Sequence record: MG592456.1
Direction: 5' to 3' (one strand)
Length of the DNA stretch: 64,000 bases
Shown here: positions 14,653 to 32,081 of the stretch, piece by piece
Position numbering within the stretch: position 1 is the stretch's first letter
How the letters are laid out: each line of letters starts with the position of its first letter
The notes under the pieces: generated by a model
What the model was told of the DNA's origin: nothing
The model's input: only the letters and a program-made list of their open reading frames with translations
The model's database searches: none
Made by a program: the position numbers and the translations under genes

Positions 14653-14668
14653 ATCAATTTCCTCATAC

Positions 14669-21461: not shown

Positions 21462-21512
21462 AAAGTTTGTTCTGTCATTAGTACTTATAACTATACTTTT
21501 GACGTTTGAATT

Positions 21513-21588: not shown

Positions 21589-22197
21589 ATGTTTACAATT
21601 ATCAAAGTGCCACCGTTTCATAACACCGCCCTTGCCAACTTTACCACAATGAGGACACGTGACTTCATCAATCGAGTGTTCTTCATAATGCCTCTTCAAA
21701 CTCTCTGAAATTTTTTGCTTTTGTGATTCAGTCTTATCTTGTTTGCCAATCTTTATACCATGTTCGACCGCCGCAGCATAACGCTCTTCGCCACGTTTTA
21801 CCCAATAATTATCAGCGTACTTCTCTCTGATTTTATCACTCACCGCACGACCAGACAACGTTTTAGAAATTTTCGCCTTAGATTCATCAGTGTGTGGTAT
21901 CCCACTACGATTAAGATGGTCGAACCCACCTTCACCACCCAACTTCAGATTATATGTCATGGAGTTTTCTACAAACTCACGATCAACATACACAGCCTCA
22001 CGCTCGTACATTTCATCAGAACTGTCACATTGTTCTAGAATTTCACACTCGAAGCTATCAACGCCATACTTGTTAATTGCACGTTTCAGAAGCTTACCGG
22101 ATCCGATATACCCATCTTCTAGGTCTTCGGTTTTGTGTGCTCCGATGTAGATCTTACCATTGGTTTTATTAGTGGTTTTATAAACAATATAATACAT
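21574..22197 (-). mobile_element. free-standing Seg-like GIY-YIG homing endonuclease gene with NUMOD3 and C-terminal CPHC..RWHFDNC domain
   Basis: IVY-KTTN..NGKIYIG..K...GYIGSG..L..AI.KYG..F..EIL; inserted in the tRNA cluster as T4 segB is. Confidence 0.85.
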
Positions 22198-22203
22198 ATC
22201 AAA

Positions 22204-22252
22204 CTCCTATACTATTATTTATAATAGTAGTATAAGAGTTTAACAATGTCAA
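22204..22252 (-). promoter_or_regulatory. homing-endonuclease control region: late promoter inside an SD-sequestering hairpin plus a sigma70 promoter
   Basis: TATAAATA at 22216-22223 within the stem ACTATTAT/ATAATAGT, which extends into AGG of the SD; TTGACA-N17-TACTAT at 22224-22252. Confidence 0.65.
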
Positions 22253-22267
22253 TAAAAAAAGAATACC

Positions 22268-22385
22268 TAGGTTGAGCGGAACAGCGTGCAATAATCAATA
22301 GAATTCAAGTATGACTCTACCTATGCGCATCACCGTCTACTATGTCGGGCTATCCATTATGCCCCGTGATGCAATTCCAAACCTA
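22268..22385 (-). ncRNA. unidentified structured RNA
   Basis: nested helices UAGGUU/AACCUA, GGAA/UUCC, GCAUCAC/GUGAUGC, GGGC/GCCC; no ORF; U tract after it. Confidence 0.5.
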
Positions 22386-22563
22386 ATTAGCTCTGTTTAG
22401 TCGTTTTAGTCCTCGACGATATCCAGTCTCGCTTTATCGAATCTCTTCGATATAACTACTATACATCTTGATACAACGACAATAAACAACTATTTTCATT
22501 TAATTTCACTTTTCAGAATAAAATTAAAAAAAAAGGATAATCTTTCGATTATCCTTAAATGAT

Positions 22564-22655
22564 GTGCATTGCTCGGCTTACTGGCGATCTTAATGGGTAT
22601 TTCAAGCATACAGAATTTCCGAGCGCTACTACAATGCTTTTTTCGCTAAATGCAC
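22564..22655 (-). ncRNA. unidentified structured RNA directly 3' of tRNA-His
   Basis: GUGCAUU/AAUGCAC and GCUCGG/CCGAGC helices. Confidence 0.45.
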
Positions 22656-22657
22656 TT

Positions 22658-22734
22658 TGGGGTGACCGACGGGACTCGAACCCGCAACCGCCATCTTCAC
22701 AGGATGGAGCTCTCCCAGTTGAGCTACGGCCACA
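22658..22734 (-). tRNA. trnH: tRNA-His(GTG)
   Basis: CCATC-CTGTGAA-GATGG, C73, CCA; the genomic -1 base is T, not G. Confidence 0.93.
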
Positions 22735-22747
22735 CCAAAGTACACTT

Positions 22748-22822
22748 TGGTAGTTCTGGAGAATTTCGAAATCTCGACTTCTTCCTTGTAAGGGAAGCAC
22801 TCTGCCTCTGAGTTACAGAACT
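22748..22822 (-). tRNA. trnV: tRNA-Val(TAC)
   Basis: CTTCC-CTTACAA-GGAAG, CCA. Confidence 0.95.
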
Positions 22823-22986
22823 ATTCTTTTAGAATAAAATATAGGATAAATCCAGAACACACGAATCATTTTAACTTCGTAAGTTGGCGCATGACGATTG
22901 TCACAATTATACAGTGTCAATACATTGAAAAACTGCCACCACTTATCAGGCTTAACGTATTTCTTCGAATTATCATAAAGATTCAT
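22813..22986 (-). CDS. small hypothetical protein (57 aa)
   Basis: GAGA RBS, MNLYDNSKK...; the stop falls in the 5' end of tRNA-Val. Confidence 0.55.
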   Translation of the reverse strand: MNLYDNSKKYVKPDKWWQFFNVLTLYNCDNRHAPTYEVKMIRVFWIYPIFYSKRIVL

Positions 22987-23002
22987 ATTATATTCTCAAT
23001 TA

Positions 23003-23190
23003 AATTGAAGTGATGTGCCGAGTTAGCGGAGTACTGTTTCAACCCTCTGGGTCTCGCCTGCACATCATTATCCCACACGTTACTTTACTTCAAAAACATC
23101 GCTCATCGTCGCGTGTATACTTCAATTCAGCATAAGCCTCTCTTCCGATATACAAGCGGAAGTTACATTTGATTCTCCACGACATTGAGC
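23003..23190 (-). ncRNA. unidentified structured, possibly pseudoknotted RNA
   Basis: helices AAUUGAAGU/ACUUCAAUU, GAUGUGC/GCACAUC, CUUCCG/CGGAAG, GCUCA/UGAGC. Confidence 0.55.
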
Positions 23191-23195
23191 AAATT

Positions 23196-23271
23196 TGGAG
23201 CAGGAGACGAGATTCGAACTCGCGGCTTCCGACGTGGAAGGACGGCACTCTACCAATTGAGTTACACCTGC
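23196..23271 (-). tRNA. trnG: tRNA-Gly(TCC)
   Basis: CCGTC-CTTCCAC-GTCGG, U73, CCA. Confidence 0.93.
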
Positions 23272-23497
23272 TTTAAAACTTTAGAATTAAGTATTTTATA
23301 CACGAATATCAGGTTCGTGTCAATCTGAAGCATTAAACAAATCTTGAATTGCTTTCAAGTTTGCTAGCTCTACTTTAAGTGCTCTTATAAAGAACGGGTT
23401 TGACTCATAAAAAAGTCTGTCTTCAACATCACGTATTTGCACACGAATGTTGCCCTTGCTTAGTGTAAAGTAATCATGCTTCTTTTCCTTTAGAATT

Positions 23498-23573
23498 TGG
23501 TAGTGCCACTGACAATCGAAGTCAGAACTGAACCGTTATGAGCGGTCCGCTATGCCACTTTAGCTACAGCACC
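23498..23573 (-). tRNA. tRNA(CAT), elongator Met or Ile2
   Basis: GACCG-CTCATAA-CGGTT, A73, CCA. Confidence 0.85.
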
Positions 23574-23876
23574 ATTGTAGCAACTATTAGTTGCTATGGA
23601 TATCAAGATACAGATAATCACGAAGTGTTTTATCGTCTTTTGCTTTAATCGCGGTTGACTATTCACTTTATTCGCTAGTGAAAGCTATCGCCTGATTCAG
23701 TGACGCACCTATTCTCATGTTTCCATAAGAAGATATCTTTCTCTTGAGACAATGCAAGCACTATCCGAGTTAAGATGATCACTTTGAGTATGATTATTTT
23801 TTGCGGTACATTATCTTACTCAACATATGCGCCATGCCGAAGCAGAGGGATCACAGTATGATGAGCTTCTTAATTT

Positions 23877-23952
23877 TGGTACGCCTACTAGGATTCGAAC
23901 CTAGACTTCAACCTTAGAAGGGTCGAGTGCTCGTCCATTACACCATAAGCGC
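23877..23952 (-). tRNA. trnR: tRNA-Arg(TCT)
   Basis: CGACC-CTTCTAA-GGTTG, CCA. Confidence 0.93.
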
Positions 23953-24032
23953 TTTGTAAAAAACTATTCCATAAGCTGTCATCGAAGATGATAGTAAGTG
24001 AAAATTCGATACTCATGTGAATAGTGTTAAAT

Positions 24033-24108
24033 TGGTGGAGACGGTCGGAGTCGAACCGACAACAGTCTGCGTGCAAGGCAAACTCGCTCCCTCAGTACAT
24101 GCGTCCCC
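24033..24108 (-). tRNA. trnA: tRNA-Ala(TGC), irregular D arm
   Basis: G3:U70, A73, TTTGC-CTTGCAC-GCAGA, CCA. Confidence 0.9.
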
Positions 24109-24115
24109 AATTTGT

Positions 24116-24337
24116 TTATGATAGATTAGCGACTACTGCTTCACTCCAGCCATATAGCTCATCAAGTTCGTCTGCATCGTCAATGCCAGTATCTTTTAAC
24201 AGACTAGATATGACCATCTGCTCGATTTCGTCAGACGTTGCGTCCGCTGCCACTGAATATACTTCTTCGTTGTTATTGCCACCGAATTGACCACCGAAGT
24301 CATATTCACACCAAACTTGGATATATTTTAAGCTCAT
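24116..24337 (-). CDS. small acidic hypothetical protein
   Basis: 73-aa ORF with GAGA RBS between tRNAs. Confidence 0.7.
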   Translation of the reverse strand: MSLKYIQVWCEYDFGGQFGGNNNEEVYSVAADATSDEIEQMVISSLLKDTGIDDADELDELYGWSEAVVANLS

Positions 24338-24359
24338 ATATTTCTCACATAATTAAAAA

Positions 24360-24433
24360 TGGTGCTTCTAGGCGGACTCGAACTGCCACGACTTGATTAC
24401 AAAACAAGCATACTGCCATTATATTATAGAAGC
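24360..24433 (-). tRNA. trnT: tRNA-Thr(TGT)
   Basis: CTTGT-TTTGTAA-TCAAG, CCA. Confidence 0.9.
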
Positions 24434-24438
24434 GAATC

Positions 24439-24543
24439 TGAGTGTGTATTTACCAGCGCACCAGCGTGCATACCAAGCACTGCGAGAATCGAACTCGCGC
24501 CGTTCGTGTAAAAGACGAATTTGTTGTTTGCTGTAAACACTCA
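24439..24543 (-). ncRNA. circularly permuted tRNA mimic (YrlA-like) with CAGCAA motif and Lys anticodon loop
   Basis: terminal helix UGAGUGU/ACACUCA, UUA-CAGCAAAC, UUCGU-CUUUUAC-ACGAA, GCGAG-UUCGAUU-CUCGC T arm, loop-closed GUGC/GCAC acceptor-like stem, D-like arm; no CCA. Confidence 0.8.
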
Positions 24544-24551
24544 ATAGTATT

Positions 24552-24625
24552 TGGCAGGTCTAATAGGGTTCGAACCTATACCACGTCTGTCAAAGAGACG
24601 GGTGCTTCCATTACACCATAGACCT
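24552..24625 (-). tRNA. trnQ: tRNA-Gln(TTG)
   Basis: CGTCT-CTTTGAC-AGACG, G73, CCA. Confidence 0.95.
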
Positions 24626-24647
24626 AAATTTATTCATAAATGATTTT

Positions 24648-24723
24648 TGGCAGAGCCGACGGGTTTCGATCCCGCTACCTTCGCTGTGACAGAGCGATGT
24701 TCTACCGATTGAACTACGGCTCT
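24648..24723 (-). tRNA. trnD: tRNA-Asp(GTC)
   Basis: TCGCT-CTGTCAC-AGCGA, G73, CCA; T loop ATCGAAA; the leader pairs with CCA and trailer. Confidence 0.93.
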
Positions 24724-24766
24724 CCAAAAATCACTTTGGGATGCTTAACTGTGCATCAACAGAATT

Positions 24767-24841
24767 TGGCAGGGGTACAAGGACTCGAACCCTGACGAGC
24801 GGATTTGGAATCCGCCATGCTACCATTGACATCACACCCCT
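24767..24841 (-). tRNA. trnW: tRNA-Trp(CCA)
   Basis: GCGGA-TTCCAAA-TCCGC, G73, CCA. Confidence 0.95.
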
Positions 24842-24855
24842 ATGTACTTTAAAAC

Positions 24856-24929
24856 TGGTAGTCTCACAGAGACTTGAACTCTGACCGTTCGGTTATCAGC
24901 CGAGTGCTCTACCATTGAGCTATGAGACT
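24856..24929 (-). tRNA. trnI: tRNA-Ile(GAT)
   Basis: CTCGG-CTGATAA-CCGAA, CCA. Confidence 0.93.
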
Positions 24930-24933
24930 AAAT

Positions 24934-25020
24934 TGGCGGAAGAATAGAGATTCGAACTCTAATGCCCATTTCTGAACGTCGGTTTTCAAGACCGGTGCAA
25001 TACCATTATGCGATTCTTCC
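24934..25020 (-). tRNA. trnS: tRNA-Ser(TGA)
   Basis: CCGGT-CTTGAAA-ACCGA, long variable arm, G73, CCA. Confidence 0.95.
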
Positions 25021-25026
25021 ATTGTT

Positions 25027-25103
25027 TGGTTGCGTGAGGGTAGATTCGAACTACCGACCTTTAGCTTATGAGGCTAACGAGCTGACCACTGCTCTACTCC
25101 GCA
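25027..25103 (-). tRNA. trnM: tRNA-Met(CAT), initiator-like D arm, bulged acceptor stem
   Basis: TTAGC-CTCATAA-GCTAA, CCA; acceptor 3' strand is 8 nt. Confidence 0.85.
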
Positions 25104-25119
25104 TTTGTATCTTAATTTG

Positions 25120-25308
25120 TTACTTTTCGAACTGAACTTTACATGCGTCTGACTCAAAAACAAACTTACCAGTCGCATTTTCTTGAATCTCGACTGTACA
25201 TCGTTTAGTATCAAGCTCACCACTTGTTGTTACATCTTTAACTGTGATGCCAGATGCAGCACATGCAGTCAATGATAATGCCATTACAATTGCAGCAATA
25301 AATTTCAT
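25120..25308 (-). CDS. small lipoprotein
   Basis: MKFIAAIVMALSLTAC lipobox. Confidence 0.8.
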   Translation of the reverse strand: MKFIAAIVMALSLTACAASGITVKDVTTSGELDTKRCTVEIQENATGKFVFESDACKVQFEK

Positions 25309-25327
25309 GTAAAACCTTTTCTGAATT

Positions 25328-25413
25328 TGGTGGTTCACCTAGGACTCGAACCTAGAATACCCGTTAGGGTGGAGGATTTACAATCCCCTGACTTACCATT
25401 AGTCTAATGAACC
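25328..25413 (-). tRNA. trnY: tRNA-Tyr(GTA)
   Basis: GGGGA-TTGTAAA-TCCTC, long variable arm, CCA. Confidence 0.95.
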
Positions 25414-25418
25414 GAATG

Positions 25419-25492
25419 TGGTGCTCTATACGGGAGTCGAACCCGTCTCTTCACATTGAAAGTGTGATGACCTACCGATAGTCGAATAGAGC
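25419..25492 (-). tRNA. trnE: tRNA-Glu(TTC)
   Basis: TCACA-CTTTCAA-TGTGA, CCA. Confidence 0.95.
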
Positions 25493-25586
25493 AAAAAAAA
25501 TATTTTTTAATGAAACAAGCAAGTCATTTGATTTTCATCGAATTGATCATTTAACGGGCCCAGCTTCTTTCACTAAAAGATATTTT

Positions 25587-25721
25587 CTAATATCCCTTTA
25601 ATCTTTGTCTCTGTCTAGCAGCCTTTAACTTAGCACGCTGACCGTATTGCTTTTCTAGTTTAGCACCATGATAACTATGATACTGATAATGACAAGATAA
25701 TTTCTTATAAAGACCTTTCAT
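25587..25721 (-). CDS. small basic hypothetical protein
   Basis: GGGGG RBS before MKGLYKK. Confidence 0.55.
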   Translation of the reverse strand: MKGLYKKLSCHYQYHSYHGAKLEKQYGQRAKLKAARQRQRLKGY

Positions 25722-25747
25722 ATACCCCCCTAGATTTTGATTATAAC

Positions 25748-25805
25748 AGAATGCGTTTTGCTTGAAAGCCAATTTTCAAATTTTGTTGTTTGCTGAATAC
25801 ATTCT
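25748..25805 (-). ncRNA. minimal CAGCAA-motif RNA with Glu-type anticodon loop
   Basis: AGAAUGU-AUU-CAGCAAAC...UUGG-CUUUCAA-GCAA...GCAUUCU. Confidence 0.7.
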
Positions 25806-25836
25806 TAATCTATCACAAGACTCACGCCTTGAAATT

Positions 25837-25911
25837 TGGTGCACCCTCGCAGACTCGAACTGCGTACCTCGGGACTTCAATCCGATGCTTTTCCTGTTAA
25901 GCTAAAGGTGC
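25837..25911 (-). tRNA. trnF: tRNA-Phe(GAA), atypical anticodon arm
   Basis: TCGGA-TTGAAGT-CCCGA (A31:C39, G37), short variable loop, CCA. Confidence 0.8.
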
Positions 25912-25912
25912 T

Positions 25913-25987
25913 TGGTGCGTCGCCTGAGATTTGAACTCAGACCAACTTGGTTAAAAGCCAAGTGTACTACCATTATACTAACGACGC
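25913..25987 (-). tRNA. trnK: tRNA-Lys(TTT)
   Basis: CTTGG-CTTTTAA-CCAAG, CCA. Confidence 0.95.
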
Positions 25988-26003
25988 ATTTGTTACTTTA
26001 ATA

Positions 26004-26078
26004 TGGCGCTGATGGAGAATTTCGAAATCTCGACCTGAGAGTTAACAGCTCCCTGCTCTGCCTCTGAGCTACATCAGC
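26004..26078 (-). tRNA. trnN: tRNA-Asn(GTT)
   Basis: GGGAG-CTGTTAA-CTCTC, G73, CCA. Confidence 0.95.
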
Positions 26079-26084
26079 TAAATT

Positions 26085-26161
26085 TGGTGCGCATGGAGAG
26101 ACTCGAACTCTCAACTTCTGGTTTCTAAAACCAGTGACTCTGCCAATTGGCCTACACGCGC
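26085..26161 (-). tRNA. trnL: tRNA-Leu(TAG), short variable loop
   Basis: CTGGT-TTTAGAA-ACCAG, A73, CCA. Confidence 0.9.
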
Positions 26162-26423
26162 TTTGTTCTTTGTGTTAGTTTCGAACGTTTCATCGTTCTT
26201 AGCTATTGTACACGTTGTTTTCGTTAATGTAAACATCTTTTTTACTTTTATTTGAAGTAGTTAATGTTTTCATTTTCGAGTGTTTATATTAACACTGATT
26301 AAGAACGTATTAAACAAATCATTTAATAAACTGTTAAATTCTATCTCACGACAGTAGATAACATGATACGGTCCTAAGCGTATCAAAACTACAAGTGACA
26401 GTCAATGACTATCGCTTTAAAAT

Positions 26424-26501
26424 TGGTACACCATATAAGATTCGAACTTATAACCTTTCCCTTCGTAGGGGAGTGCTCTATTCCAGTTGAGCTAATGGTG
26501 C
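26424..26501 (-). tRNA. trnR: tRNA-Arg(ACG)
   Basis: CTCCC-CTACGAA-GGGAA, CCA. Confidence 0.93.
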
Positions 26502-26602
26502 ATTGACGACTTTACGGCACTATGAATAGTGAGTCGTCACCGTAAACTTCGGGAGAAGTTATTCTTATCTGACTCGATTAAACTAATCAAATCAACTGTA
26601 TA

Positions 26603-26680
26603 TGGTCCGGATAGAAGGATTCGAACTTTCGACTTCATCGTCCCAAACGATGCGCTCTGGCCTGACTGAGCTATACCCGG
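26603..26680 (-). tRNA. trnP: tRNA-Pro(TGG)
   Basis: CATCG-TTTGGGA-CGATG, A73, CCA. Confidence 0.95.
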
Positions 26681-27089
26681 ATTATCTTGTAACTTAGTTT
26701 ATTATACTCAACTTTCGAATACATTAAACTAAATTTTAGACATAAAAAAAGACGCTAATTAGCGTCCTAGAGTATTGGAAATATACTTTCGGACTATTTG
26801 TGGATATCCCACTTCTGTTCATTAATCGGATTCGCTAGATACACGGATTCTAGGCGCATAAACGTGCCGCGATGTCCTTTAAATGTATTTGCAATCGAAT
26901 CTTTCATGATTTCTCTCTGAACGTAATTAAAATGTTTTGTTTCTATAATAGTACTTATAACACTAAAATCGACGATTCGTGTTATTTTAGCAATAAACCG
27001 CAAATAAATTGCATTTATTTTAAAAAAATTGTGCTCCGTGTGGACTTTAACCACTCCAACCGTCGAAGCTAACGGTTATTCAAACTGAA

Positions 27090-27419
27090 CTAGCCGTATG
27101 TTCTATCAGCAATGATTAGCAAATTACCAGGCATAATACCCATAGTTGACTCTTTATATGGCTTAACTCTATCTAACCAGCGAGTTTTCGCTAATATATG
27201 ACCACCAAGAACTGACAAAATTGCATAACCACTATCAAACCCATCAGGTTGTATTCGCAATTGCTCAATCTGTTTCATCAAGTCAGTGACCCAATGTACT
27301 TGGTCTCCTTCCGTAACGACGTACACACCGGGCGGTAAGAAACGTTTAGTCTTGATACCATATTCTCTTGAAACACGAAGCAAGCTTTCATGAAGCGCTA
27401 CATTGTTAAATTCAATCAT
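27090..27419 (-). CDS. hypothetical protein
   Basis: 109-aa ORF with AGAG RBS. Confidence 0.7.
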   Translation of the reverse strand: MIEFNNVALHESLLRVSREYGIKTKRFLPPGVYVVTEGDQVHWVTDLMKQIEQLRIQPDGFDSGYAILSVLGGHILAKTRWLDRVKPYKESTMGIMPGNLLIIADRTYG

Positions 27420-27459
27420 GTAATATACTCTACCGTAAAAACATATTTATACTGATAAA

Positions 27460-27990
27460 CTATCGCAATTTGAACGCGAGATTTCGATACTGAGAGCTGC
27501 GTTTATTCTTGATTGAATGGAACTTAGCCCAGTCAATCTTAATCGGGCAATTTTTGCTGCCGATACGTGCTAAAAACACATTTTCGCGCGGATACTTTTC
27601 TTGATATTCAGAAATTCTCTTCTGCAACCCAGCCGCATACTTACCACAAGCTCTGTTATAGTCAGTCTTTGAAAACTTACCATCACGAGTTTTGTTTACG
27701 TCATAGTTAACTGACGGTCTATAAACCCGCGCTTCAGTCGATGACCAGCCCATATTGAAGCTATATTCAACTTCAGCACGAAGAACACCTGTATCTCGAT
27801 TTCGTGCTAACACGACCCATCCACGAGTTCTAGTGAAGTCTTTAAACGTATGCGTCTTGTCATAATTCTGATGACGGTTGTTATACAAGTTACGAAGAAC
27901 TGTTTTAACATCACTCGACATAGAGTCACGCTGTTCTTTAGTGAACGCAATTCCAAATCGTTGTAACTTTATCTGTAGTTTAGGTTTCAT
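27460..27990 (-). CDS. basic hypothetical protein
   Basis: GAGA RBS before MKPKLQ; the annotated upstream extension overlaps an RNA element. Confidence 0.7.
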   Translation of the reverse strand: MKPKLQIKLQRFGIAFTKEQRDSMSSDVKTVLRNLYNNRHQNYDKTHTFKDFTRTRGWVVLARNRDTGVLRAEVEYSFNMGWSSTEARVYRPSVNYDVNKTRDGKFSKTDYNRACGKYAAGLQKRISEYQEKYPRENVFLARIGSKNCPIKIDWAKFHSIKNKRSSQYRNLAFKLR

Positions 27991-28006
27991 AATAATATTC
28001 TCTTGT

Positions 28007-28242
28007 CGCCCACAAGAGGACTCGAACCTCTTTCTAACACAACACATCATCAACCCGATCAGGGTTTCGAAGTAAGAACTAATCAGCATATCAGATCATA
28101 AAGAGCATTATTTACGTCCGCAGATTCGACTCCACTCGCGATTTTTGACTCTAGGCTCGGTGATTCATCACGAAACGAGATAATTAATCAAGCTTTGTGG
28201 TAATGTCGAGCAAACACTGCGTATAGTACACCTGTTGCGGGC
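28007..28242 (-). ncRNA. ~236-nt tRNA-like RNA (acceptor stem and T arm around a large insert)
   Basis: GCCCGCA/UGUGGGC acceptor-like stem, AAGAGG-UUCGAGU-CCUCUU T arm, no encoded CCA. Confidence 0.6.
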
Positions 28243-28406
28243 ATTGTTAAGTTATCAAGTCTGTCTCGACTTGAACTTCATTATTTCATACTTGAATCTT
28301 AAATACAAGCTTTATTTTAAAAAAAATCAGGATTAATGTGAGACTTCTGCGTGTATTAAGCATCTTCCCGATGCACCTGAACACTATTTACATTCTCACT
28401 TTAAAT

Positions 28407-28482
28407 TGGTGGCCCACGATCGGATTCGAACCGATAACCCTACAGTTATGAGCTGTGCGCACTACCATTGTGCTACGGGGCC
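28407..28482 (-). tRNA. tRNA(CAT), Ile2-like acceptor (GGCCCC), bulged acceptor stem
   Basis: CACAG-CTCATAA-CTGTA, A73, CCA. Confidence 0.85.
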
Positions 28483-28488
28483 GTTATG

Positions 28489-28659
28489 TTAATCGATTGT
28501 CGGTTCAACTCGTGGCTTAGTGCCATGATAAGCGTGACCTTGGTCTTCAACGCGATATGTTGATGGGTTAAACTTGTTCGGGCGTTTTTGCACACCACGA
28601 ACGACAATCCATATAGCCGACAAAACGCTAGCTGCGATTATTAATAATCCTAAATCCAT
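28489..28659 (-). CDS. small membrane protein
   Basis: MDLGLLIIAASVLSAIWIVVR TM helix, GAGG RBS. Confidence 0.6.
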   Translation of the reverse strand: MDLGLLIIAASVLSAIWIVVRGVQKRPNKFNPSTYRVEDQGHAYHGTKPRVEPTID

Positions 28660-28671
28660 GTTCATTTCCTC

Positions 28672-29064
28672 TTATTTTCTCAACCATTCACCGAAATGAT
28701 TACCGAACATATGACATTCAAATGTAATCACATCGACTGTTTTACGTGAAGATTCTACATCATGTTTATGCAGCGTGTCAAGACGATATGCACATTTTAA
28801 AAGTTCTTTTGTTGTTCTTAAAATATCGTGATAGTCAGGTGCAATCAATTGCGGATGACTACTTAAATTTTCAAGTGCATATTCGATCTTACTGTAAGCA
28901 CCTAATGCAATGAAATTCACGATTAATCTATAGTGCATTTCTATCGCAAACCCAGAATGTTCTCGTAAATTACGTTTTACAATCTGACTTCTTGCTAGAA
29001 TCTCATCAAGTTCAGCGCAAATAGCGTTGAACTCGTGATTATACGGGTTGAAAATGTTTTCCAT
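28672..29064 (-). CDS. hypothetical protein
   Basis: 130-aa ORF with GGGGA RBS. Confidence 0.7.
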   Translation of the reverse strand: MENIFNPYNHEFNAICAELDEILARSQIVKRNLREHSGFAIEMHYRLIVNFIALGAYSKIEYALENLSSHPQLIAPDYHDILRTTKELLKCAYRLDTLHKHDVESSRKTVDVITFECHMFGNHFGEWLRK

Positions 29065-29077
29065 TTGATCCCCTATA

Positions 29078-29221
29078 TTTCATTATGGCAGATCGCACTC
29101 GTTCGAACGTCCCCAGTTAGCTCTTTCGAAGTTTCGCGAATTTCGAGCGTGAGCGGCGTGGAGTTGCTTCTGTGCTTATTCATGACTTATCACCACGAAC
29201 AAATGCGTTCCCATAATGAAA
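29078..29221 (-). ncRNA. unidentified structured RNA
   Basis: 11-bp UUUCAUUAUGG/CCAUAAUGAAA helix plus a 12-bp inner helix containing G:U pairs. Confidence 0.55.
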
Positions 29222-29230
29222 CATTAAAAT

Positions 29231-29354
29231 TGGTGGAGAGAGCGGGATTCGAACCACGCGACCGAAAGATTTACTTAGTTAAAAGTTTGCAGTAGGCATT
29301 CTTGTCAGAATACACATAACATTCTTTTGCTCTACCAGACTGAGCTATCTCTCC
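29231..29354 (-). ncRNA. tRNA body with CAGCAA-type insert in the anticodon arm
   Basis: GGAGAGA/UCUCUCC-A-CCA, D arm, bulged T arm; insert GUAUUCU-GACA-AGAAUGC-CUA-CUGCAAAC. Confidence 0.75.
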
Positions 29355-29402
29355 ATTTGCAGCGCTGTGTTTACTGCATGAACACAGCGCCAATACTTCT
29401 CA

Positions 29403-29533
29403 TATGCCTAACCAACTATACACAACCCAAAATCGTGCGCTGGAAGCATCGATACATCAAACATCGACACGTAAGCAGTTGGTGCGATATACGCGCACAC
29501 CCATTCTTCCAAAAGTTCTGAGGCATACAGAAC
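29403..29533 (-). ncRNA. pseudoknotted structured RNA
   Basis: the hairpin loop UAUGCCU is complementary to AGGCAUA ~110 nt downstream; ACCAACU/AGUUGGU helix. Confidence 0.55.
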
Positions 29534-29588
29534 GATATTCATGAGTGCGAGTAAAAATTCAAACATTTTCACCCCACTTAGTATTAGT

Positions 29589-29732
29589 GAGAGTGCATTG
29601 AGCGGGGTGCAGGAATCGAACCTGCGTCACGATCTTTGAAGGATATGCGTTTTGGTTGCTGAATACAAGCTTGTCAGCTTGCGTTTAGCTACGTGTGTTA
29701 TCCACTACACCAACCCCGCTCAATGCACTCTC
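29589..29732 (-). ncRNA. tRNA body with CAGCAA insert, UCA anticodon-like loop and 20-bp extended acceptor helix
   Basis: GCGGGGU/ACCCCGC, D and T arms; GCAAGCU-GACA-AGCUUGU-AUU-CAGCAACC; AUC-CUUCAAA-GAU; no CCA. Confidence 0.75.
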
Positions 29733-29733
29733 T

Positions 29734-29887
29734 AATATTTTTTATGTACGCTATTGCGCTGACCATCATGCGAATATCTAACATGACTAGCCTTTGATTA
29801 CAACCTACCCCGCTAAGAGTGATTGTCGCGCGTCAGGGCTTAACTGACATTATGTATTTCATTAGTCTAACGTACATAAAAAATATT
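29734..29887 (-). ncRNA. unidentified structured RNA closed by a perfect 17-bp helix
   Basis: AATATTTTTTATGTACG / CGTACATAAAAAATATT, with internal hairpins GUCAG/CUGAC and UCAUG/CAUGA. Confidence 0.55.
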
Positions 29888-30035
29888 GTTCATCTTCAGC
29901 GAAGAGACAGAAACGATGAACCTAGTCTGCTTAATCTGTATGAATGATATCAACTTTTCAGTAGAAGTCAAACACTTTTAAAATATTTATTCATCAAATC
30001 AAGAGTTTATTTCGTCTCTCGACTTGATGAATTAC

Positions 30036-30064
30036 ATTCTACACCCATTTTGAAGATAGTCAAC
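30036..30064 (-). promoter_or_regulatory. early/sigma70 promoter driving the RNA cluster
   Basis: GTTGAC-N17-TAGAAT; similar promoters recur at ~29950, 26700, 26200, 23300, 22460 and 21320. Confidence 0.7.
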
Positions 30065-30080
30065 AACTATCTTCAAATAA

Positions 30081-30332
30081 TTACGTTTGAATGATAATGC
30101 CGCTTTCAGTTTCACCTGCTTCTAGGCATTGATGCTTGATCTGTAGCTGCGTAACGGCAGCTTGCAATTCGTTAATTGCACGATCATACAGCTTCATGTT
30201 TCGCCCTTGCGAGGCAATTTGGTCAGCTTGCATGCCGATGATATATGTCAACAGTACAATGTTTTCATCCGTTGTAAGTTCTTCACCGGCATCATACTTG
30301 TCAACAACGGCTTTAGTAGATAGATCACTCAT
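30081..30332 (-). CDS. hypothetical coiled-coil protein
   Basis: ORF overlapping the gp57B stop. Confidence 0.65.
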   Translation of the reverse strand: MSDLSTKAVVDKYDAGEELTTDENIVLLTYIIGMQADQIASQGRNMKLYDRAINELQAAVTQLQIKHQCLEAGETESGIIIQT

Positions 30333-30780
30333 TGTTTTCAATCCAATTCAAATCTAGTGGCTCAACGTACTCATCTACTAGACGAATATCGAGATTAACA
30401 AATAGTGGAGTTATTTTGTCATCGTATGACAGCGTAACGTGCGGGGAGTAATCAGGGTAGTCATGTGTCCCACCAGCAGATATCAAGTCATCATGACGCT
30501 CTGAGAGCGCATCACAACTAAGTTTAGCAACGACAGCGTATTTGCCGTCTTGCGTCTTCCAGCAGTCCACATAATTAACCTTTGCTTGATAAGTGTTATC
30601 AGTCGCAGGTACATCTAGTTGTTTACGACTATACAATATAGTCGCGTGGAATTGCTTTGAATCTAATGGATTAGTTAGACGAAGAACTCGTTGCAGAGTG
30701 ATTAACTCTTGTTGACTCGCTTCGTCTAACTTAACACCGACATAAGTTCCCTGAGTCTCATTGTACTCAGAAAGATTCAT
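30325..30780 (-). CDS. 57B: gp57B, 2H phosphoesterase-like
   Basis: two HxT/S motifs (FHATILYS, PHVTLSY); T4 gene order. Confidence 0.9.
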   Translation of the reverse strand: MNLSEYNETQGTYVGVKLDEASQQELITLQRVLRLTNPLDSKQFHATILYSRKQLDVPATDNTYQAKVNYVDCWKTQDGKYAVVAKLSCDALSERHDDLISAGGTHDYPDYSPHVTLSYDDKITPLFVNLDIRLVDEYVEPLDLNWIENNE

Positions 30781-30789
30781 GCGTGTTCC

Positions 30790-31071
30790 TTAATCTACAA
30801 GTTCAGCTTCAGCAGCTTCAGCAGCTTCTTCAGCAGCTTCAGGGCGTTCCGCTTTGCCAGTCAAGTATGCAACTTCATCAACATAGTTCTGAAGACTAGC
30901 AGCCTTTTCTTGGTCGAAATCTAAAAGTTGTGCCAGAATGTTGACAAATTGGCCGAATGAACCGCGTTCTGCTTCAAGTGCTTCTTGTAAGTCGAATACT
31001 CGAACCTTCAAGCCCTTTGCAGTTTCAGTTAGTTGTTCGATTTGCTTTTCTGGAGTTTGTTCTTGTGACAT
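30790..31071 (-). CDS. 57A: gp57A tail fibre assembly chaperone
   Basis: acidic coiled coil LKVRVFDLQE, located between gene 1 and 57B. Confidence 0.75.
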   Translation of the reverse strand: MSQEQTPEKQIEQLTETAKGLKVRVFDLQEALEAERGSFGQFVNILAQLLDFDQEKAASLQNYVDEVAYLTGKAERPEAAEEAAEAAEAELVD

Positions 31072-31076
31072 GAGTA

Positions 31077-31721
31077 TTACCTTAAATTTAAGTTTTTAAT
31101 TTTTTCATAAAGATCGCCAATCGACCCATCATTTTGTATTTGAATTGCGCTTTCAATAAATTGCAATTCGGTATCGCTGATGTGATTCGATGCAAGTGAA
31201 CCAGCTCGATTAACTTGCAACACAGTTCCACCTAGCTCGTGAACTAATGCTAATTCATTTTCGAATCGAACGTCCGTTATTATAAATGTTAATTCGGGGT
31301 TGTTAAACATCATTTTGTTATATTTATTACGAGCATAATTGACCCAATGTTGATCATCAAGTGATCGTGCAACGTCAGTGCCTGTAAGTTGGAGTAAGTC
31401 GCGTATACTGAATAGACCTTGATGGTCTAGCAATGTGTAATATACATAGTCGTAATCTGCGGCAACGTCTGCGTATTCGCAGCACTTTAAAACTATTTCA
31501 ATAGCCTCATCCAAATTGAACGTAGGGACTTCCCTATCGAATCCATCTTGTCCGTCAACGTCTGCATATTCGTAGCCGTATTTACTAAGCTCGATCATCA
31601 GACCCTCTTTAATTGGATCTGCAAATTTATACACACACGTTTCGCCAGCCCCCATTTCTTGTATAGCACAAGCGACGGTATCTTTACCCGAACGCTTCAT
31701 GCCATTAATTCCTACTATCAT
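31077..31721 (-). CDS. 1: deoxynucleoside monophosphate kinase
   Basis: GMKRSGKDT P-loop, FADPIK, RDLLQLTGTDVAR, ITDVRFENE. Confidence 0.93.
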   Translation of the reverse strand: MIVGINGMKRSGKDTVACAIQEMGAGETCVYKFADPIKEGLMIELSKYGYEYADVDGQDGFDREVPTFNLDEAIEIVLKCCEYADVAADYDYVYYTLLDHQGLFSIRDLLQLTGTDVARSLDDQHWVNYARNKYNKMMFNNPELTFIITDVRFENELALVHELGGTVLQVNRAGSLASNHISDTELQFIESAIQIQNDGSIGDLYEKIKNLNLR

Positions 31722-31800
31722 AGCTGTACCATGTTATTGTTGTTTGTGTATGTGTAATTATACAATAAGAATCAAGCACTCTAAACAGTAGCAAGTCATG

Positions 31801-32081
31801 TCATTCTCTAATATTTCTAATTTCTCTAAGAACACTAAAATCACTAATTCTACTAAGATGAGACGGAATTTTTCCACCACAGCCAAATCCTTTCGCTTCG
31901 CTTGATTTCTTCAGACACAAGAGTAATTGATCTTCAATTCATCATTGGGTCATGTTCATTCTCTAATTTCTCTAATATTTCTAATTTCTCTAAGAACACT
32001 AAAATCACTAATTCTACTAAGATGAGACGGAATTTTTCCGCCTCGCCAAATCCTTTCGCTTCGCTTGGTTTCTTCTAGACA
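31801..32081 (+). repeat. two tandem copies of a ~110-bp non-coding repeat (third copy, inverted, at 58355-58485)
   Basis: CTAATTTCTCTAAGAACACTAAAATCACTAATTCTACTAAGATGAGACGGAATTTTTCC...CTTCGCTTG..TTCTTC at ~31801-31917 and ~31950-32081. Confidence 0.95.

What the first reader, a model, noticed from the sequence alone, without database searches (positions are those of the whole stretch)
29589..29732. UCA-loop tRNA mimic with CAGCAA insert and a sealed 20-bp acceptor helix
It has D and T arms, the GACA-capped motif helix, and then a hairpin with loop CUUCAAA, the tRNA-Sec/opal-reading loop. The acceptor stem continues into a further 13 perfect base pairs and there is no CCA, so it is probably uncharged unless processed. 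It may be a decoy for tRNA-Sec or UGA-reading factors, or a precursor of an opal suppressor.
Basis: partly seen in the sequence, partly recalled or inferred. Interest (0 to 1): 0.72.

Follow-up and report, generated by a model that had tools for sequence, protein, structure and literature searches.

The report
Phage tRNA gene with structured insert
This is a conserved gene of a KVP40-like Vibrio phage for a tRNA-shaped RNA whose anticodon stem is split by a 47-base structured insert, one member of a widespread, phage-only and apparently uncharacterised class of interrupted tRNA genes, not a selenocysteine-tRNA mimic.

Summary
The described structure is real, on the minus strand (29589-29732). 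It has a 7-bp acceptor stem extended by 13 more pairs, D and T arms, a GACA-capped hairpin, CAGCA, and an AUC/CUUCAAA/GAU hairpin. No CCA is encoded. Fold z-score is -9. In 14 orthologues 99.3% of pair cells are paired and 23 of 42 pairs change on both sides.

The window is Vibrio phage 1.081.O (Schizotequatrovirus). Relatives annotate these genes as "pseudo" or undetermined tRNAs.

Removing 47 nt between tRNA positions 28 and 29 gives a perfect 71-nt cloverleaf with anticodon UCA. The same insert module interrupts at least 57 distinct tRNA genes in large phages. It is a 7-bp hairpin with a GNNA loop, 3 nt, then CNGCA, usually starting UA and ending AU. All 57 are called tRNAs after in-silico removal and none before. 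No convincing copy turned up in 185,579 bacterial and archaeal genomes.

It is not tRNA-Sec. The UCA loop is not conserved among orthologues, and TGA is an ordinary stop here.

My best reading is an intron-like intervening sequence removed by an unknown cut-and-join pathway. The flanking helix would be a processing stem. The main rival is an unspliced tRNA-like RNA.

The parts
29720..29732 (-). 5' strand of the 13-bp helix that extends the acceptor stem (GAGAGUGCAUUGA)
   Evidence: Pairs perfectly with 29589-29601. The helix is present in all B1/B2 orthologues with compensatory changes; 13 of 21 pairs of extension+acceptor change on both sides and 100% of cells are paired.
29713..29719 (-). 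Acceptor stem 5' strand, tRNA positions 1-7 (GCGGGGU)
   Evidence: Seven pairs with 29602-29608; covaries across orthologues.
29695..29710 (-). D arm (GUGU-AGUGGAUA-ACAC), with the GG of the D loop
   Evidence: Read directly. The stem is essentially invariant in 14 relatives, 100% paired with a single one-sided change.
29692..29694 (-). Positions 26-28 (A, C27, G28): end of the proposed 5' exon
   Evidence: C27-G43 and G28-C42 are invariant. Positions 27-28 are CG in 42 of 44 family members with the insert at 28/29.
29645..29691 (-). 47-nt insert (intervening sequence) between tRNA positions 28 and 29; starts UA, ends AU
   Evidence: Its removal gives a 71-nt sequence whose MFE is a cloverleaf (-29.0 kcal/mol) and which ARAGORN calls a tRNA with anticodon tca. 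The module is shared by at least 57 distinct phage tRNA genes.
29665..29682 (-). Insert hairpin GCAAGCU-GACA-AGCUUGU (7 bp, GNNA tetraloop closed by CU/AG)
   Evidence: 6 of 7 pairs change on both sides in the orthologues. Of 49 family hairpins, 43 have G..A loops and 34 have the CU/AG closing pairs.
29657..29661 (-). Conserved CAGCA (C-N-G-C-A) motif, 3 nt after the hairpin
   Evidence: Present in 42 of 44 inserts at position 28/29. The spacer is 3 nt in 41 of 49 members. Its flank (AGC-A-AC) can pair with G28 plus the insert's start (GU-A-GCU).
29630..29644 (-). Positions 29-43: AUC / CUUCAAA / GAUCG (rest of the anticodon stem plus the 7-nt loop)
   Evidence: Read directly. The stem is invariant in 14 of 14 relatives, while the loop varies and is sometimes 8 nt.
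29637..29639 (-). Would-be anticodon UCA
   Evidence: Positions 34-36 of the in-silico spliced form. It is not conserved in the orthologues.
29609..29629 (-). Variable loop UGAC and T arm GCAGG-UUCGAUU-CCUGC
   Evidence: Read directly. 4 of 5 T-stem pairs change on both sides. This is the only part picked up by Rfam, as a 13-bit tmRNA fragment.
29602..29608 (-). Acceptor stem 3' strand (ACCCCGC); the next base, U at 29601, is the would-be discriminator; no CCA follows
29589..29601 (-). 3' strand of the extension helix (UCAAUGCACUCUC)
29235..29354 (-). Sister element A: tRNA-Asn(GUU)-like gene with the same insert module (GUAUUCU-GACA-AGAAUGC, CUA, CUGCA) in the anticodon loop; CCA encoded
   Evidence: Rfam tRNA at 52.1 bits with a 48-nt insertion. 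GenBank annotates it tRNA-Asn GTT. The motif search finds only these two copies in the window, against 0.13 expected.

Best explanation
The element is a transcribed gene for a tRNA precursor of a phage-specific lineage, called 'B2' here, one of two paralogues in KVP40-like Schizotequatroviruses. Its anticodon stem is interrupted between nucleotides 28 and 29 by a 47-nt structured intervening sequence. That insert belongs to a widespread class found only in large phages. The class module is a 7-bp hairpin with a GNNA loop closed by CU/AG, a 3-nt spacer and C-N-G-C-A. The insert usually begins UA after C27-G28 and usually ends AU.

Shown: the structure, its conservation and covariation; the family; and that precise removal restores canonical tRNAs.

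Inferred mechanism: the RNA is released from a longer transcript through the 20-bp terminal helix, a double-strand-specific processing stem of the RNase III type, followed by RNase P and 3' trimming. The insert folds into a long irregular hairpin whose base includes G28. An as yet unidentified nuclease (or nucleases) cuts after G28 and before A29. The acceptor, D and T helices hold the two halves together, so the product is a nick inside the anticodon-stem duplex. An RNA ligase seals it; Rnl2-type nick-sealing ligases are present in this phage clade. The phage CCA-adding enzyme adds CCA. In this phage the product would carry anticodon UCA, but the loop is evolutionarily labile, so UGA reading is not the conserved function of the lineage.
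For: Structure and selection:
- Fold z-score is -9.03.
- 99.3% of pair cells are paired and 23 of 42 pairs are compensatory across 14 relatives.

Identity of the window and existing annotation:
- The window is MG592456.1, and the element is annotated tRNA-OTHER.
- KVP40 homologues are annotated tRNA-Pseudo-3/4/5.

In-silico removal:
- Removing the insert gives a cloverleaf MFE and an ARAGORN tRNA call.
- The same solver finds 57 distinct insert-bearing genes. These come from Schizotequatroviruses, Citrobacter phage Ci1, Yersinia phage fHe-Yen9-04 and about 40 IMG/VR contigs.
- 57 of 57 are called tRNAs after removal and 0 of 57 before.
- The restored anticodon arms are canonical for Asp, Gly, Glu, Pro, Asn, Thr, Lys and Met.
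- The discriminator base mostly fits the restored anticodon: U73 in 3 of 4 Gly(UCC) and G73 in 4 of 5 Asp(GUC) (the identity rules are from my own knowledge).

Splice-site and module regularities:
- UA start in 39 of 44, AU end in 35 of 44, C27-G28 in 42 of 44, CNGCA in 42 of 44.
- GNNA loop in 43 of 49 and 3-nt spacer in 41 of 49.
- G28 plus the insert's 5' end pairs with nucleotides just 3' of CNGCA, for example GUAUAU/AUAUAC, GUAUUA/UAAUAC and GUAAA/UUUAC. The mean helix length is 3.33 against 2.92 +/- 0.12 for swapped partners.

Distribution and available enzymes:
- The class looks phage-specific: 36 pattern hits in viral contigs are nearly all genuine, while none of 14 hits in 185,579 bacterial/archaeal genomes looks like a tRNA.
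- Rnl2 homologues occur in 53 Vibrio phage records, including nt-1.
- A tRNA nucleotidyltransferase is reported for the KVP40/phi-pp2 clade (PMC3468402).
- Promoter-like sites lie 210-330 nt upstream on the same strand, though they are not enriched over chance.
Against: - No RNA data exist, so splicing is not shown.
- No endonuclease candidate was found. No archaeal-type endonuclease or RtcB turned up among the neighbours scanned. The adjacent '57B RNA ligase' is Acb1.
- A bulge-helix-bulge cannot be drawn, and no ribozyme family matches.
- No insert-free allele of the recurrent lineages exists in IMG/VR or in 241 million metagenome records.
- The insert-bearing genes are paralogues of the phage's ordinary tRNAs for the same codons, not orthologues (at most 75% identity). 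The insert may therefore be a permanent functional part.
- Most B2 orthologues restore an 8-nt loop (AUUCAUAA), which is odd for a decoding tRNA.
- The sealed acceptor stem without CCA is unusual for a tRNA gene.
- T4 also has Rnl2 but no such inserts.
Confidence: 0.55

Rival explanations
1. The RNA is never spliced. It is a stable tRNA-shaped non-coding RNA whose insert hairpin and sealed acceptor helix are functional parts. It could be a decoy or sponge for host tRNA-targeting nucleases or tRNA-binding factors. It could also be the tRNA-like partner of the phage's Ro60-like (ROT/TROVE, DUF2828) RNA-binding protein, comparable in topology to Deinococcus Yrn1.
For: - The acceptor end is closed by 13 extra conserved pairs and lacks CCA.
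- Insert-free alleles were never found.
- The genes duplicate codon specificities the phage already covers.
- The anticodon loop is the only fast-changing part and is 8 nt long in most orthologues.
- The window encodes a Ro60-like DUF2828+DUF7788 protein at 14701-16134.
- That protein family lies within a few hundred nt to a few kb of insert-bearing tRNAs in Ci1, L133, L139, L136, L142, L152, L154, L145 and L010.
- In cells, Ro60 proteins work with tRNA-like Y RNAs (PMC4201824, PMC7824862).
- T4 has two stable RNAs of unknown function (rnaC, rnaD) in the same syntenic region.
Against: - Family members outside Schizotequatrovirus sit in ordinary tRNA arrays with free, CCA-encoded ends. They restore fully canonical anticodon arms whose identity fits the discriminator base.
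- There is no Ro-binding GNCGAAN(0-1)G motif and no YrlA hit.
- Felixounavirus, Campylobacter, Listeria and Mycobacterium phages have the DUF2828 gene but no insert-bearing tRNA beside it. The co-location may only reflect a shared tRNA/RNA-repair neighbourhood.
- The Ro-like gene is 13.5 kb away in this window.
Confidence: 0.3
2. One reading: a tRNA-Sec / UGA-decoding mimic that titrates SelB, SelA or release factor 2, or an opal suppressor as the conserved purpose of the locus.
For: - The loop CUUCAAA gives U33 and anticodon UCA.
- ARAGORN labels the spliced form tRNA-SeC(tca), but purely from the anticodon.
- An unrelated family member in Yersinia phage fHe-Yen9-04 also restores UCA (AUUCAAC), and the common 8-nt loop AUUCAUAA contains UCA.
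- U73 with G1-C72, C2-G71 and G3-C70 resembles glycine identity. Classical glyT-derived UGA suppressors exist (my own knowledge, not tested).
Against: - No tRNA-Sec architecture is present, and there is no tRNA-Sec model hit.
- The closest orthologues carry UCU, UUC or 8-nt loops instead.
- TGA is used as a normal stop in 5 of 46 long ORFs, and there are no credible in-frame TGAs.
Confidence: 0.07
3. The insert is a small self-cleaving or self-splicing RNA that removes itself without proteins.
For: The single-stranded nucleotides are strongly conserved (CU-GNNA-AG, CNGCA). A helix places the 5' junction next to the conserved motif.
Against: At 38-63 nt it is far below the size of group I or group II introns. 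No hit to any Rfam ribozyme family appears even at E <= 10. The 5' exon ends in G, not the U of a group I P1 helix. The CUGAYAAG loop lacks the hammerhead's catalytic G.
Confidence: 0.05
4. It is a decaying tRNA pseudogene, as the 'tRNA-Pseudo' labels in KVP40-type annotations imply.
For: tRNA finders give low scores or undetermined anticodons (PMC3468402, PMC5107563).
Against: There are compensatory changes in every helix and invariant stems over several phage genera. The same module appears in dozens of unrelated phage contigs.
Confidence: 0.03

Closest known systems
Archaeal/eukaryal protein-spliced tRNA introns (bulge-helix-bulge, including non-canonical positions in archaea)
   Same: A short (tens of nt) intervening sequence in or next to the anticodon arm of an otherwise normal tRNA gene. 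Precise removal restores a cloverleaf. Positions vary between genes (28/29, 31/32, 37/38 here).
   Different: No bulge-helix-bulge can be drawn. The 5' junction lies inside a helix (G28 paired with an insert C). The insert carries its own conserved sequence module. The hosts are bacteriophages of bacteria, where no splicing endonuclease is known, and none was seen.
Group I introns in bacterial and phage genes (e.g. tRNA-Leu, tRNA-Ile of bacteria)
   Same: The only known introns of bacterial tRNA genes; they sit in the anticodon arm.
   Different: They are at least 200 nt, lie in the loop, follow a U.G pair in P1 and are found by Rfam. Here the insert is 38-63 nt, follows G28 and has no model hit.
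'Enigmatic introns' of Lak megaphage tRNAs (Devoto et al., bioRxiv 10.1101/356790)
   Same: Oversized 'pseudo' tRNAs in large phage genomes, interpreted as intron-containing. The sequences are highly conserved and the mechanism is unknown.
   Different: Those were placed with the eukaryotic tRNAscan model at the canonical loop position, and no shared module was described. I could not compare the sequences. The family here is defined by a hairpin + CNGCA module and a stem position.
KVP40 tRNA-Pseudo-3/-4/-5 and 'trnX/tRNA-OTHER' annotations in phi-pp2, phi-Grn1, phi-ST2
   Same: These are the same genes or their paralogues.
   Different: The literature treats them as low-scoring pseudo-forms (PMC3468402, PMC5107563). 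The B1/B2 copies are mostly unannotated or overlaid by hypothetical ORFs.
T4 stable RNAs species 1 and 2 (rnaC, rnaD)
   Same: 120-140-nt stable RNAs of unknown function in the syntenic tRNA region between gene 57B and e. rnaC has a T arm.
   Different: No sequence similarity, no hairpin + CNGCA module and no restorable cloverleaf.
Bacterial Y RNAs (YrlA, Deinococcus Yrn1) bound by Ro60
   Same: A tRNA-like domain plus a long terminal helix without a free CCA. A Ro60-like gene lies in the same window and often near family members.
   Different: YrlA is circularly permuted (T arm, acceptor-like hairpin, D arm) and has the GNCGAAN(0-1)G motif (PMC4201824). Here the order is that of a normal tRNA, the motif is absent and there is no Rfam hit.

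Membership tests
Canonical tRNA | 7-bp acceptor stem, D arm with GG, T arm with GTTCRANYC-type loop | tested here: met
   GCGGGGU/ACCCCGC; GUGU-AGUGGAUA-ACAC; GCAGG-UUCGAUU-CCUGC; the pairs covary.
Canonical tRNA | Contiguous 5-bp anticodon stem with a 7-nt loop (U33, purine 37) | tested here: not met
   The stem is split by 47 nt after position 28. ARAGORN and the Rfam tRNA model do not call the locus. It is met only after in-silico removal: CGAUC-CUUCAAA-GAUCG.
Canonical tRNA | Free 3' end with CCA (encoded or added) and aminoacylation | not testable with these tools
   CCA is not encoded, and the 3' trailer UCAAUGCACUCUC is paired with the 5' leader. A CCA-adding enzyme is reported in the clade (PMC3468402).
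tRNA-Sec | 8/5 (bacterial) acceptor/T helices, 6-bp D stem with 4-nt loop, long variable arm, G73 | tested here: not met
   7/5 helices, 4-bp D stem with an 8-nt loop, 4-nt variable loop UGAC, U73. No RF01852 hit at gathering threshold or at E <= 10.
tRNA-Sec | Anticodon UCA conserved among orthologues | tested here: not met
   Loops seen: CUUCAAA, AUUCUAA, AUUUCAA, AUUUCCAA, AUUCAUAA, AUAGGGA, AUUAGGA.
Bulge-helix-bulge tRNA intron | Two 3-nt bulges separated by a 4-bp helix carrying the splice sites | tested here: not met
   Checked by hand on this element and on L135. The 5' junction is inside a helix and the 3' junction follows a 4-10-nt single strand. No dedicated BHB scanner was run.
Bulge-helix-bulge tRNA intron | Splicing endonuclease (EndA family) in the genome | not tested
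   Only about 35 neighbouring ORFs were scanned against Pfam/PHROGs, and none matched. The rest of the 239-kb genome was not scanned.
Group I intron | Catalytic core of at least about 200 nt, P1 with U.G at the 5' splice site, Rfam model match | tested here: not met
   47 nt; the exon ends in G; no hit.
Small self-cleaving ribozymes (hammerhead, twister, pistol, hatchet, hairpin) | Match to a family covariance model | tested here: not met
   No match at E <= 10 in 26600-32000.
Y RNA (YrlA type) | T arm, then acceptor-like hairpin, then D arm, with termini at the anticodon side; GNCGAAN(0-1)G motif; gene next to Ro60 | tested here: not met
   The order is the normal tRNA order. The motif is absent. 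No Rfam hit here or next to the Ro-like gene. The Ro-like gene is present but 13.5 kb away.
Phage insert-bearing tRNA family (defined here) | Insert after C27-G28 beginning UA and ending AU | tested here: met
   CG|UAGC...GCAU|AUC. Family frequencies are 42/44, 39/44 and 35/44.
Phage insert-bearing tRNA family (defined here) | 7-bp hairpin with GNNA loop closed by CU/AG, 3-nt spacer, C-N-G-C-A | tested here: met
   GCAAGCU-GACA-AGCUUGU, AUU, CAGCA. Family frequencies are 43/49, 34/49, 41/49 and 42/44.
Phage insert-bearing tRNA family (defined here) | Removal of the insert yields a sequence called a tRNA | tested here: met
   ARAGORN of 57 after removal, including this element, and 0 of 57 before.

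The most novel reading that the evidence does not exclude
Large bacteriophages carry their own, so far undescribed tRNA splicing system. A structured intron of about 47 nt (GNNA-capped hairpin + CNGCA) sits inside the anticodon stem at position 28/29. It would be recognised and excised by a phage- or host-encoded nuclease. The result would be a nicked duplex that is the natural substrate of Rnl2-type RNA ligases, whose biological substrate in phages has never been identified. The intron would keep a special set of phage tRNAs inactive or nuclease-proof until processed. These include ones with odd loops, such as UCA here or the recurrent 8-nt AUUCAUAA.
Probability: 0.35. Interest if true: 0.88.

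Novelty: new variant of a known kind. Interest (0 to 1): 0.7.

Why it matters
Bacteria and their phages are thought to lack protein-spliced tRNA introns. The only tRNA introns known there are self-splicing group I introns. This work defines a phage-specific class of short, structured intervening sequences that split otherwise canonical tRNA genes, often inside the anticodon stem. It shows strong covariation and conserved junction rules. The class has been passed over as "pseudo-tRNAs" since the KVP40 genome.

If the inserts are removed, there is a new RNA processing pathway to find. It would also give a plausible natural role to phage RNA ligase 2 and to the end-healing enzymes clustered near these genes. 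If they are not removed, this is a new family of tRNA-shaped regulatory or decoy RNAs.

Either way, tRNA counts and codon-usage arguments for large phages are currently wrong for these genes. The question is directly testable with one small-RNA sequencing experiment on KVP40-infected Vibrio.

Tried and rejected
- **57B as a splicing enzyme.** The neighbouring '57B RNA ligase / 2H phosphoesterase' (30325-30780) is Acb1, the anti-CBASS nuclease (Pfam 6.8e-44). Rejected.
- **Insert-free alleles.** I searched for them to fix the junctions. None were found in IMG/VR or in metagenome contigs.
- **Orthology with the phage's ordinary tRNAs.** Identity is at most 75%, so there is no presence/absence polymorphism.
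- **Guilt by association.** I clustered 944 ORFs around 50 loci.
  - The top cluster is a Ro60-like DUF2828 protein.
  - DSP-type phosphatase, AAA_33 kinase and metallophosphoesterase genes recur with it.
  - Four other DUF2828-bearing phage groups have no insert-bearing tRNA nearby. The link is suggestive only.
- **phrog_15953 protein (27460-27990).** It lies next to insert-tRNAs in both this phage and Citrobacter phage Ci1.
  - The word-indexed homology search found only itself.
  - The exhaustive search gave 61 relatives.
  - The AlphaFold model with that alignment is confident (pLDDT 90.4).
  - It matches nothing in the PDB (best E 0.6) and only unnamed viral proteins. No function could be inferred.
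- **Ro-like protein against PDB sequences.** No hit.
- **YrlA or other Rfam families near the Ro-like gene.** None.
- **T4 rnaC/rnaD.** No similarity to the module.
- **First IMG/VR motif scan.** It was too loose and gave mostly chance hits, which I filtered by script.
- **ARAGORN with intron option.** It places introns inconsistently and gives poor stems. Not used.
- **Literature.** Eight searches found no description of this insert class.
- **Not built.** I did not build a covariance model of the family.
Full report
**What is there**

The feature lies on the minus strand. Read 5' to 3' from 29732 down to 29589, the RNA has these parts (coordinates checked):
- a 13-nt leader, GAGAGUGCAUUGA;
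- an acceptor strand, GCGGGGU, then UG;
- a D arm, GUGU-AGUGGAUA-ACAC;
- A26, C27, G28;
- 47 nt of insert;
- AUC-CUUCAAA-GAU-CG;
- a variable loop, UGAC;
- a T arm, GCAGG-UUCGAUU-CCUGC;
- the acceptor strand ACCCCGC;
- a trailer, UCAAUGCACUCUC, that pairs perfectly with the leader.

The minimum-energy fold is -67.2 kcal/mol against -35.7 +/- 3.5 for shuffles (z = -9.03). ARAGORN finds 26 ordinary tRNAs at 20928-28482 on the same strand but not this element. Rfam finds those tRNAs plus a 121-nt tRNA with a 48-nt insertion at 29234-29354, which I call element A. At E <= 10, Rfam reports only a 13-bit tmRNA fragment on this element's T arm. It reports no tRNA-Sec, Y RNA or ribozyme family.

**Where the window comes from**

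The window is identical to Vibrio phage 1.081.O._10N.286.52.C2 (MG592456.1), a KVP40-like Schizotequatrovirus. GenBank annotates the element as tRNA-OTHER with an unknown anticodon, and element A as tRNA-Asn GTT. KVP40 lists homologous or paralogous genes as tRNA-Pseudo-3, -4 and -5. Papers on phi-pp2 and phi-Grn1/phi-St2 mention them only as low-scoring pseudo-forms (PMC3468402, PMC5107563). About 50 phage records carry an orthologue covering at least 80% of the element.

**Conservation**

KVP40-like phages have two paralogues of this gene.
- B1 has acceptor CGAGUGU and an encoded ACCA.
- B2 has acceptor GCAGGGU or UGCGGGU and the trailer UCAA.

The window has only B2. I aligned 14 B1/B2 sequences with their flanks (A1) and counted pairs for the structure I propose:
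- 99.3% of cells are standard pairs.
- 23 of 42 pairs change on both sides (0 of 500 shuffles reach this).
- Versions with partners slid by one to three columns reach only 28-50% pairing.
- The extension+acceptor helix is 100% paired, with 13 of 21 pairs compensatory.
- In the insert hairpin 6 of 7 pairs are compensatory, and in the T stem 4 of 5.
- The D stem is essentially invariant (one one-sided change) and the two parts of the anticodon stem (C27-G43, G28-C42; AUC/GAU) never vary.

A decaying pseudogene is excluded.

**The anticodon loop**

The loop is the one part that does vary:

| Gene copy | Loop |
|---|---|
| Window B2 | CUUCAAA |
| D482 B2 | AUUCUAA |
| V05 B2 | AUUUCAA |
| VH7D B2 | AUUUCCAA (8 nt) |
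| KVP40, CZ01, F86, nt-1, VS2 B2 | AUUCAUAA (8 nt) |
| B1 | AUAGGGA or AUUAGGA |

None of the tRNA-Sec hallmarks is present either: the body has 7/5 helices, a 4-bp D stem, a 4-nt variable loop and U73. TGA ends 5 of 46 long ORFs in the window. The three places with open frames on both sides of a TGA are either a normal stop followed by the next gene's ATG, or lie opposite real genes.

**The insert is an intervening sequence**

Take out the 47 nt between G28 and A29. The two CG pairs then stack on AUC/GAU to give CGAUC-CUUCAAA-GAUCG, a perfect 5-bp stem and 7-nt loop. The 71-nt product folds into a cloverleaf as its MFE, and ARAGORN calls it a tRNA with anticodon tca.

The same operation works elsewhere:
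- KVP40 Pseudo-3: CGUGC-CUGUUAA-GCACG, Asn.
- Citrobacter phage Ci1: Glu UUC and Lys CUU.
- Yersinia jumbo phage fHe-Yen9-04: three genes.
- IMG/VR viral contigs found with two pattern scans.

A script looks for acceptor, D and T arms and then for the split that restores five anticodon-stem pairs. It found 60 distinct candidates, of which 57 were kept after dropping tRNA dimers. ARAGORN of 57 after removal and 0 of 57 before.

The restored anticodon arms are canonical for Asp GUC, Gly UCC, Glu UUC, Pro UGG, Asn GUU, Thr UGU, Lys UUU/CUU and Met CAU. U73 accompanies 3 of 4 Gly genes and G73 accompanies 4 of 5 Asp genes. This is what the E. coli identity rules lead one to expect; those rules are my own knowledge. 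That concordance is hard to explain unless the restored anticodon is the functional one.

**The insert module**

Inserts are 38-63 nt long, with a median of 47. Family frequencies:

| Feature | Frequency |
|---|---|
| 7-bp hairpin followed by C-N-G-C-A | 49 of 57 |
| Loop is G..A (GACA 20, GAUA 10, GUUA 6, others fewer) | 43 of 49 |
| Closing pairs CU/AG | 34 of 49 |
| 3-nt spacer | 41 of 49 |
| Preceding exon bases CG (28/29 type) | 42 of 44 |
| Insert starts UA (28/29 type) | 39 of 44 |
| Insert ends AU (28/29 type) | 35 of 44 |

G28 plus the first four to six insert bases can pair with bases just 3' of the CNGCA motif. Examples are GUAUAU/AUAUAC, GUAUUA/UAAUAC, GUAAA/UUUAC, GUAUG/CAUAC and GAAG/CUUC. 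In this element the pairing is GU-A-GC with GC-A-AC. The mean contiguous helix is 3.33 bp, against 2.92 +/- 0.12 when partners are swapped between inserts (maximum 3.24 in 200 trials). This is a modest but real signal.

The insert is thus a long irregular hairpin. Its base contains the 5' junction. The 3' junction follows after a short single strand.

The position differs between genes. It is 28/29 in most, 31/32 in Ci1-Lys and Yen-2, and in the anticodon loop in element A and its orthologues. Only two copies of the module occur in the window, against 0.13 expected.

**Distribution**

The B-type pattern gave 36 hits in IMG/VR, nearly all with perfect acceptor and T stems. Many come from contigs of 100-520 kb. 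The same pattern gave 14 hits in one genome each of 185,579 bacterial and archaeal species, and none of them is tRNA-like. On this evidence the class is phage-specific.

I found no insert-free alleles:
- none of the AUUCAUAA lineage in IMG/VR or in 241 million metagenome records;
- none of the UCC/GGA-stem lineages in IMG/VR.

The insert-bearing genes are paralogues of the phage's ordinary tRNAs, not orthologues.

**How it may work**

Shown: the structure, the family, and the restoration of tRNAs on removal.

Inferred: the 20-bp terminal helix is the kind of substrate that double-strand-specific RNase III cuts. It occurs only in the Schizotequatrovirus B1/B2 copies, which stand alone rather than in tight arrays. 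I therefore read it as a processing or stabilising stem. RNase P cleavage, 3' trimming and CCA addition would follow. A tRNA nucleotidyltransferase is reported for KVP40/phi-pp2 (PMC3468402) and annotated in Ci1.

Excision at 28/29 would leave the halves held together by the acceptor, D and T helices, with a nick inside a duplex. Sealing such nicks is the textbook in vitro activity of T4/KVP40 RNA ligase 2 (my own knowledge). Rnl2 homologues are present in 53 Vibrio phage records.

The nuclease is unknown. The adjacent '57B RNA ligase' is Acb1. No bulge-helix-bulge can be drawn and no ribozyme model matches.

Several IMG/VR loci carry, 2-3 kb from an insert-bearing tRNA, a cluster of a Ro60-like DUF2828 protein, a DSP-type phosphatase, an AAA_33 (polynucleotide-kinase-like) protein and a metallophosphoesterase. 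This looks like an RNA end-healing set, but it could equally serve tRNA repair.

**The main rival**

The RNA may not be spliced at all. Points in favour:
- the sealed acceptor end;
- the missing CCA;
- the labile or 8-nt loop;
- the absence of insert-free alleles;
- the redundancy with ordinary tRNAs.

The window encodes a Ro60-like protein at 14701-16134 (named 'Ro-like RNA binding protein' in mycobacteriophage records). Ro60 proteins use tRNA-like Y RNAs (PMC4201824; PMC7824862; a phage example is in PMC12135203).

Points against:
- YrlA is circularly permuted and carries a GNCGAAN(0-1)G motif that is absent here.
- No Y RNA model matches here or next to the Ro-like gene.
- Four other phage groups with the DUF2828 gene have no insert-bearing tRNA beside it.

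I give this rival 0.3.

**Candidate protein followed and dropped**

A protein of unknown function (phrog_15953, 27460-27990) lies next to insert-bearing tRNAs both here and in Ci1. An exhaustive search gave 61 relatives. The AlphaFold model with them is confident (pLDDT 90.4). The fold matches no solved structure (best E 0.6) and only unnamed viral proteins. It remains an orphan.

**Comparison and verdict**

The closest known things are:
- protein-spliced tRNA introns of archaea and eukaryotes (same logic, different motif and host);
- the 'enigmatic' tRNA introns noted in Lak megaphages (10.1101/356790);
- T4's stable RNAs rnaC and rnaD (same region, no similarity).

Eight literature searches found no description of this insert class or of its junction rules. 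I rate it a new variant of a known kind. It would become a new kind if the excision machinery proves novel.

The Sec/opal-decoy reading is not supported. 'A precursor that must be processed' is the part that survives.

Noticed in passing
window 29235-29354 (-): Element A: a second insert-bearing tRNA gene (Asn GUU). It has the same hairpin + CUGCA module, placed in the anticodon loop, and CCA is encoded. Orthologues are KVP40 tRNA-Pseudo-4 and genes in D482, F86 and VS2.
   Followed up: partly
window 14701-16134 (-): Ro60-like RNA-binding protein (Pfam DUF2828 + DUF7788; phrog_850). The same family lies close to insert-bearing tRNAs in Citrobacter phage Ci1 and many IMG/VR contigs, and occurs in 710 phage records. 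No Y-RNA-like partner was detected next to it.
   Followed up: partly
window 30325-30780 (-): The homologue of T4 57B, annotated 'RNA ligase' in relatives, is Acb1, the anti-CBASS cyclic-nucleotide phosphodiesterase (Pfam PF23474, E 6.8e-44).
   Followed up: yes
window 27460-27990 (-); L121 6552-6935: phrog_15953 protein of unknown function, next to insert-bearing tRNAs in two unrelated Straboviridae. The AlphaFold model is confident (pLDDT 90.4) with no match to any solved structure. R142, G144, C148 and P149 are nearly invariant.
   Followed up: yes
window 21574-22197 (-): GIY-YIG / NUMOD3 homing-endonuclease-like ORF inside the tRNA array, as segB is in T4. HNH endonuclease genes sit likewise in related tRNA regions.
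   Followed up: no
window 24474-24542 (-): A 69-nt tRNA-like sequence found by Rfam only (34.9 bits, gathering score 29) and not called by ARAGORN.
   Followed up: no
L100, L134, L136, L140, L142, L144, L146, L148, L152-L154, L162; KVP40/CZ01/F86/nt-1/VS2 B2: The restored anticodon loop is the same 8-nt AUUCAUAA in many unrelated phage contigs, on covarying stems (UCC/GGA versus AUC/GAU). It is never found without the insert. This may be a quadruplet-reading or non-decoding tRNA.
   Followed up: partly
L136 10016-12967; L142 4425-8343; L152, L154: Conserved cluster of a Ro60-like protein, a DSP-type Cys phosphatase, an AAA_33 kinase and a metallophosphoesterase, 2-3 kb from an insert-bearing tRNA. 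It looks like an RNA end-healing module with no ligase in view.
   Followed up: partly
window 29364-29393 (-): A 10-bp GC-rich hairpin (GCGCUGUGUU-CAUGCAGUA-AACACAGCGC) six nt upstream of element A, in the 230-nt spacer that separates A and B in this phage. In D482 and F86 the two genes are only 13 nt apart.
   Followed up: no
L120 712-933 (KVP40.0319); L125 and L127 annotations: Annotated hypothetical ORFs overlap the B1/B2 genes and several ordinary tRNAs in KVP40, D482 and F86. They are probably spurious calls over RNA genes.
   Followed up: no
window 14134-14691 (-) and 16914-18335 (-): An RNase H-like ORF (PF04308) directly downstream of the Ro-like gene, and a four-Ig-domain protein (Hoc-like) upstream of it.
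   Followed up: no
L171 2344-2439 (Mycobacterium phage Lumos): An unannotated 96-nt sequence with a perfect 7-bp acceptor stem, a T arm and ACCA, in a phage that also has the Ro-like gene. It does not have the insert module.
   Followed up: no
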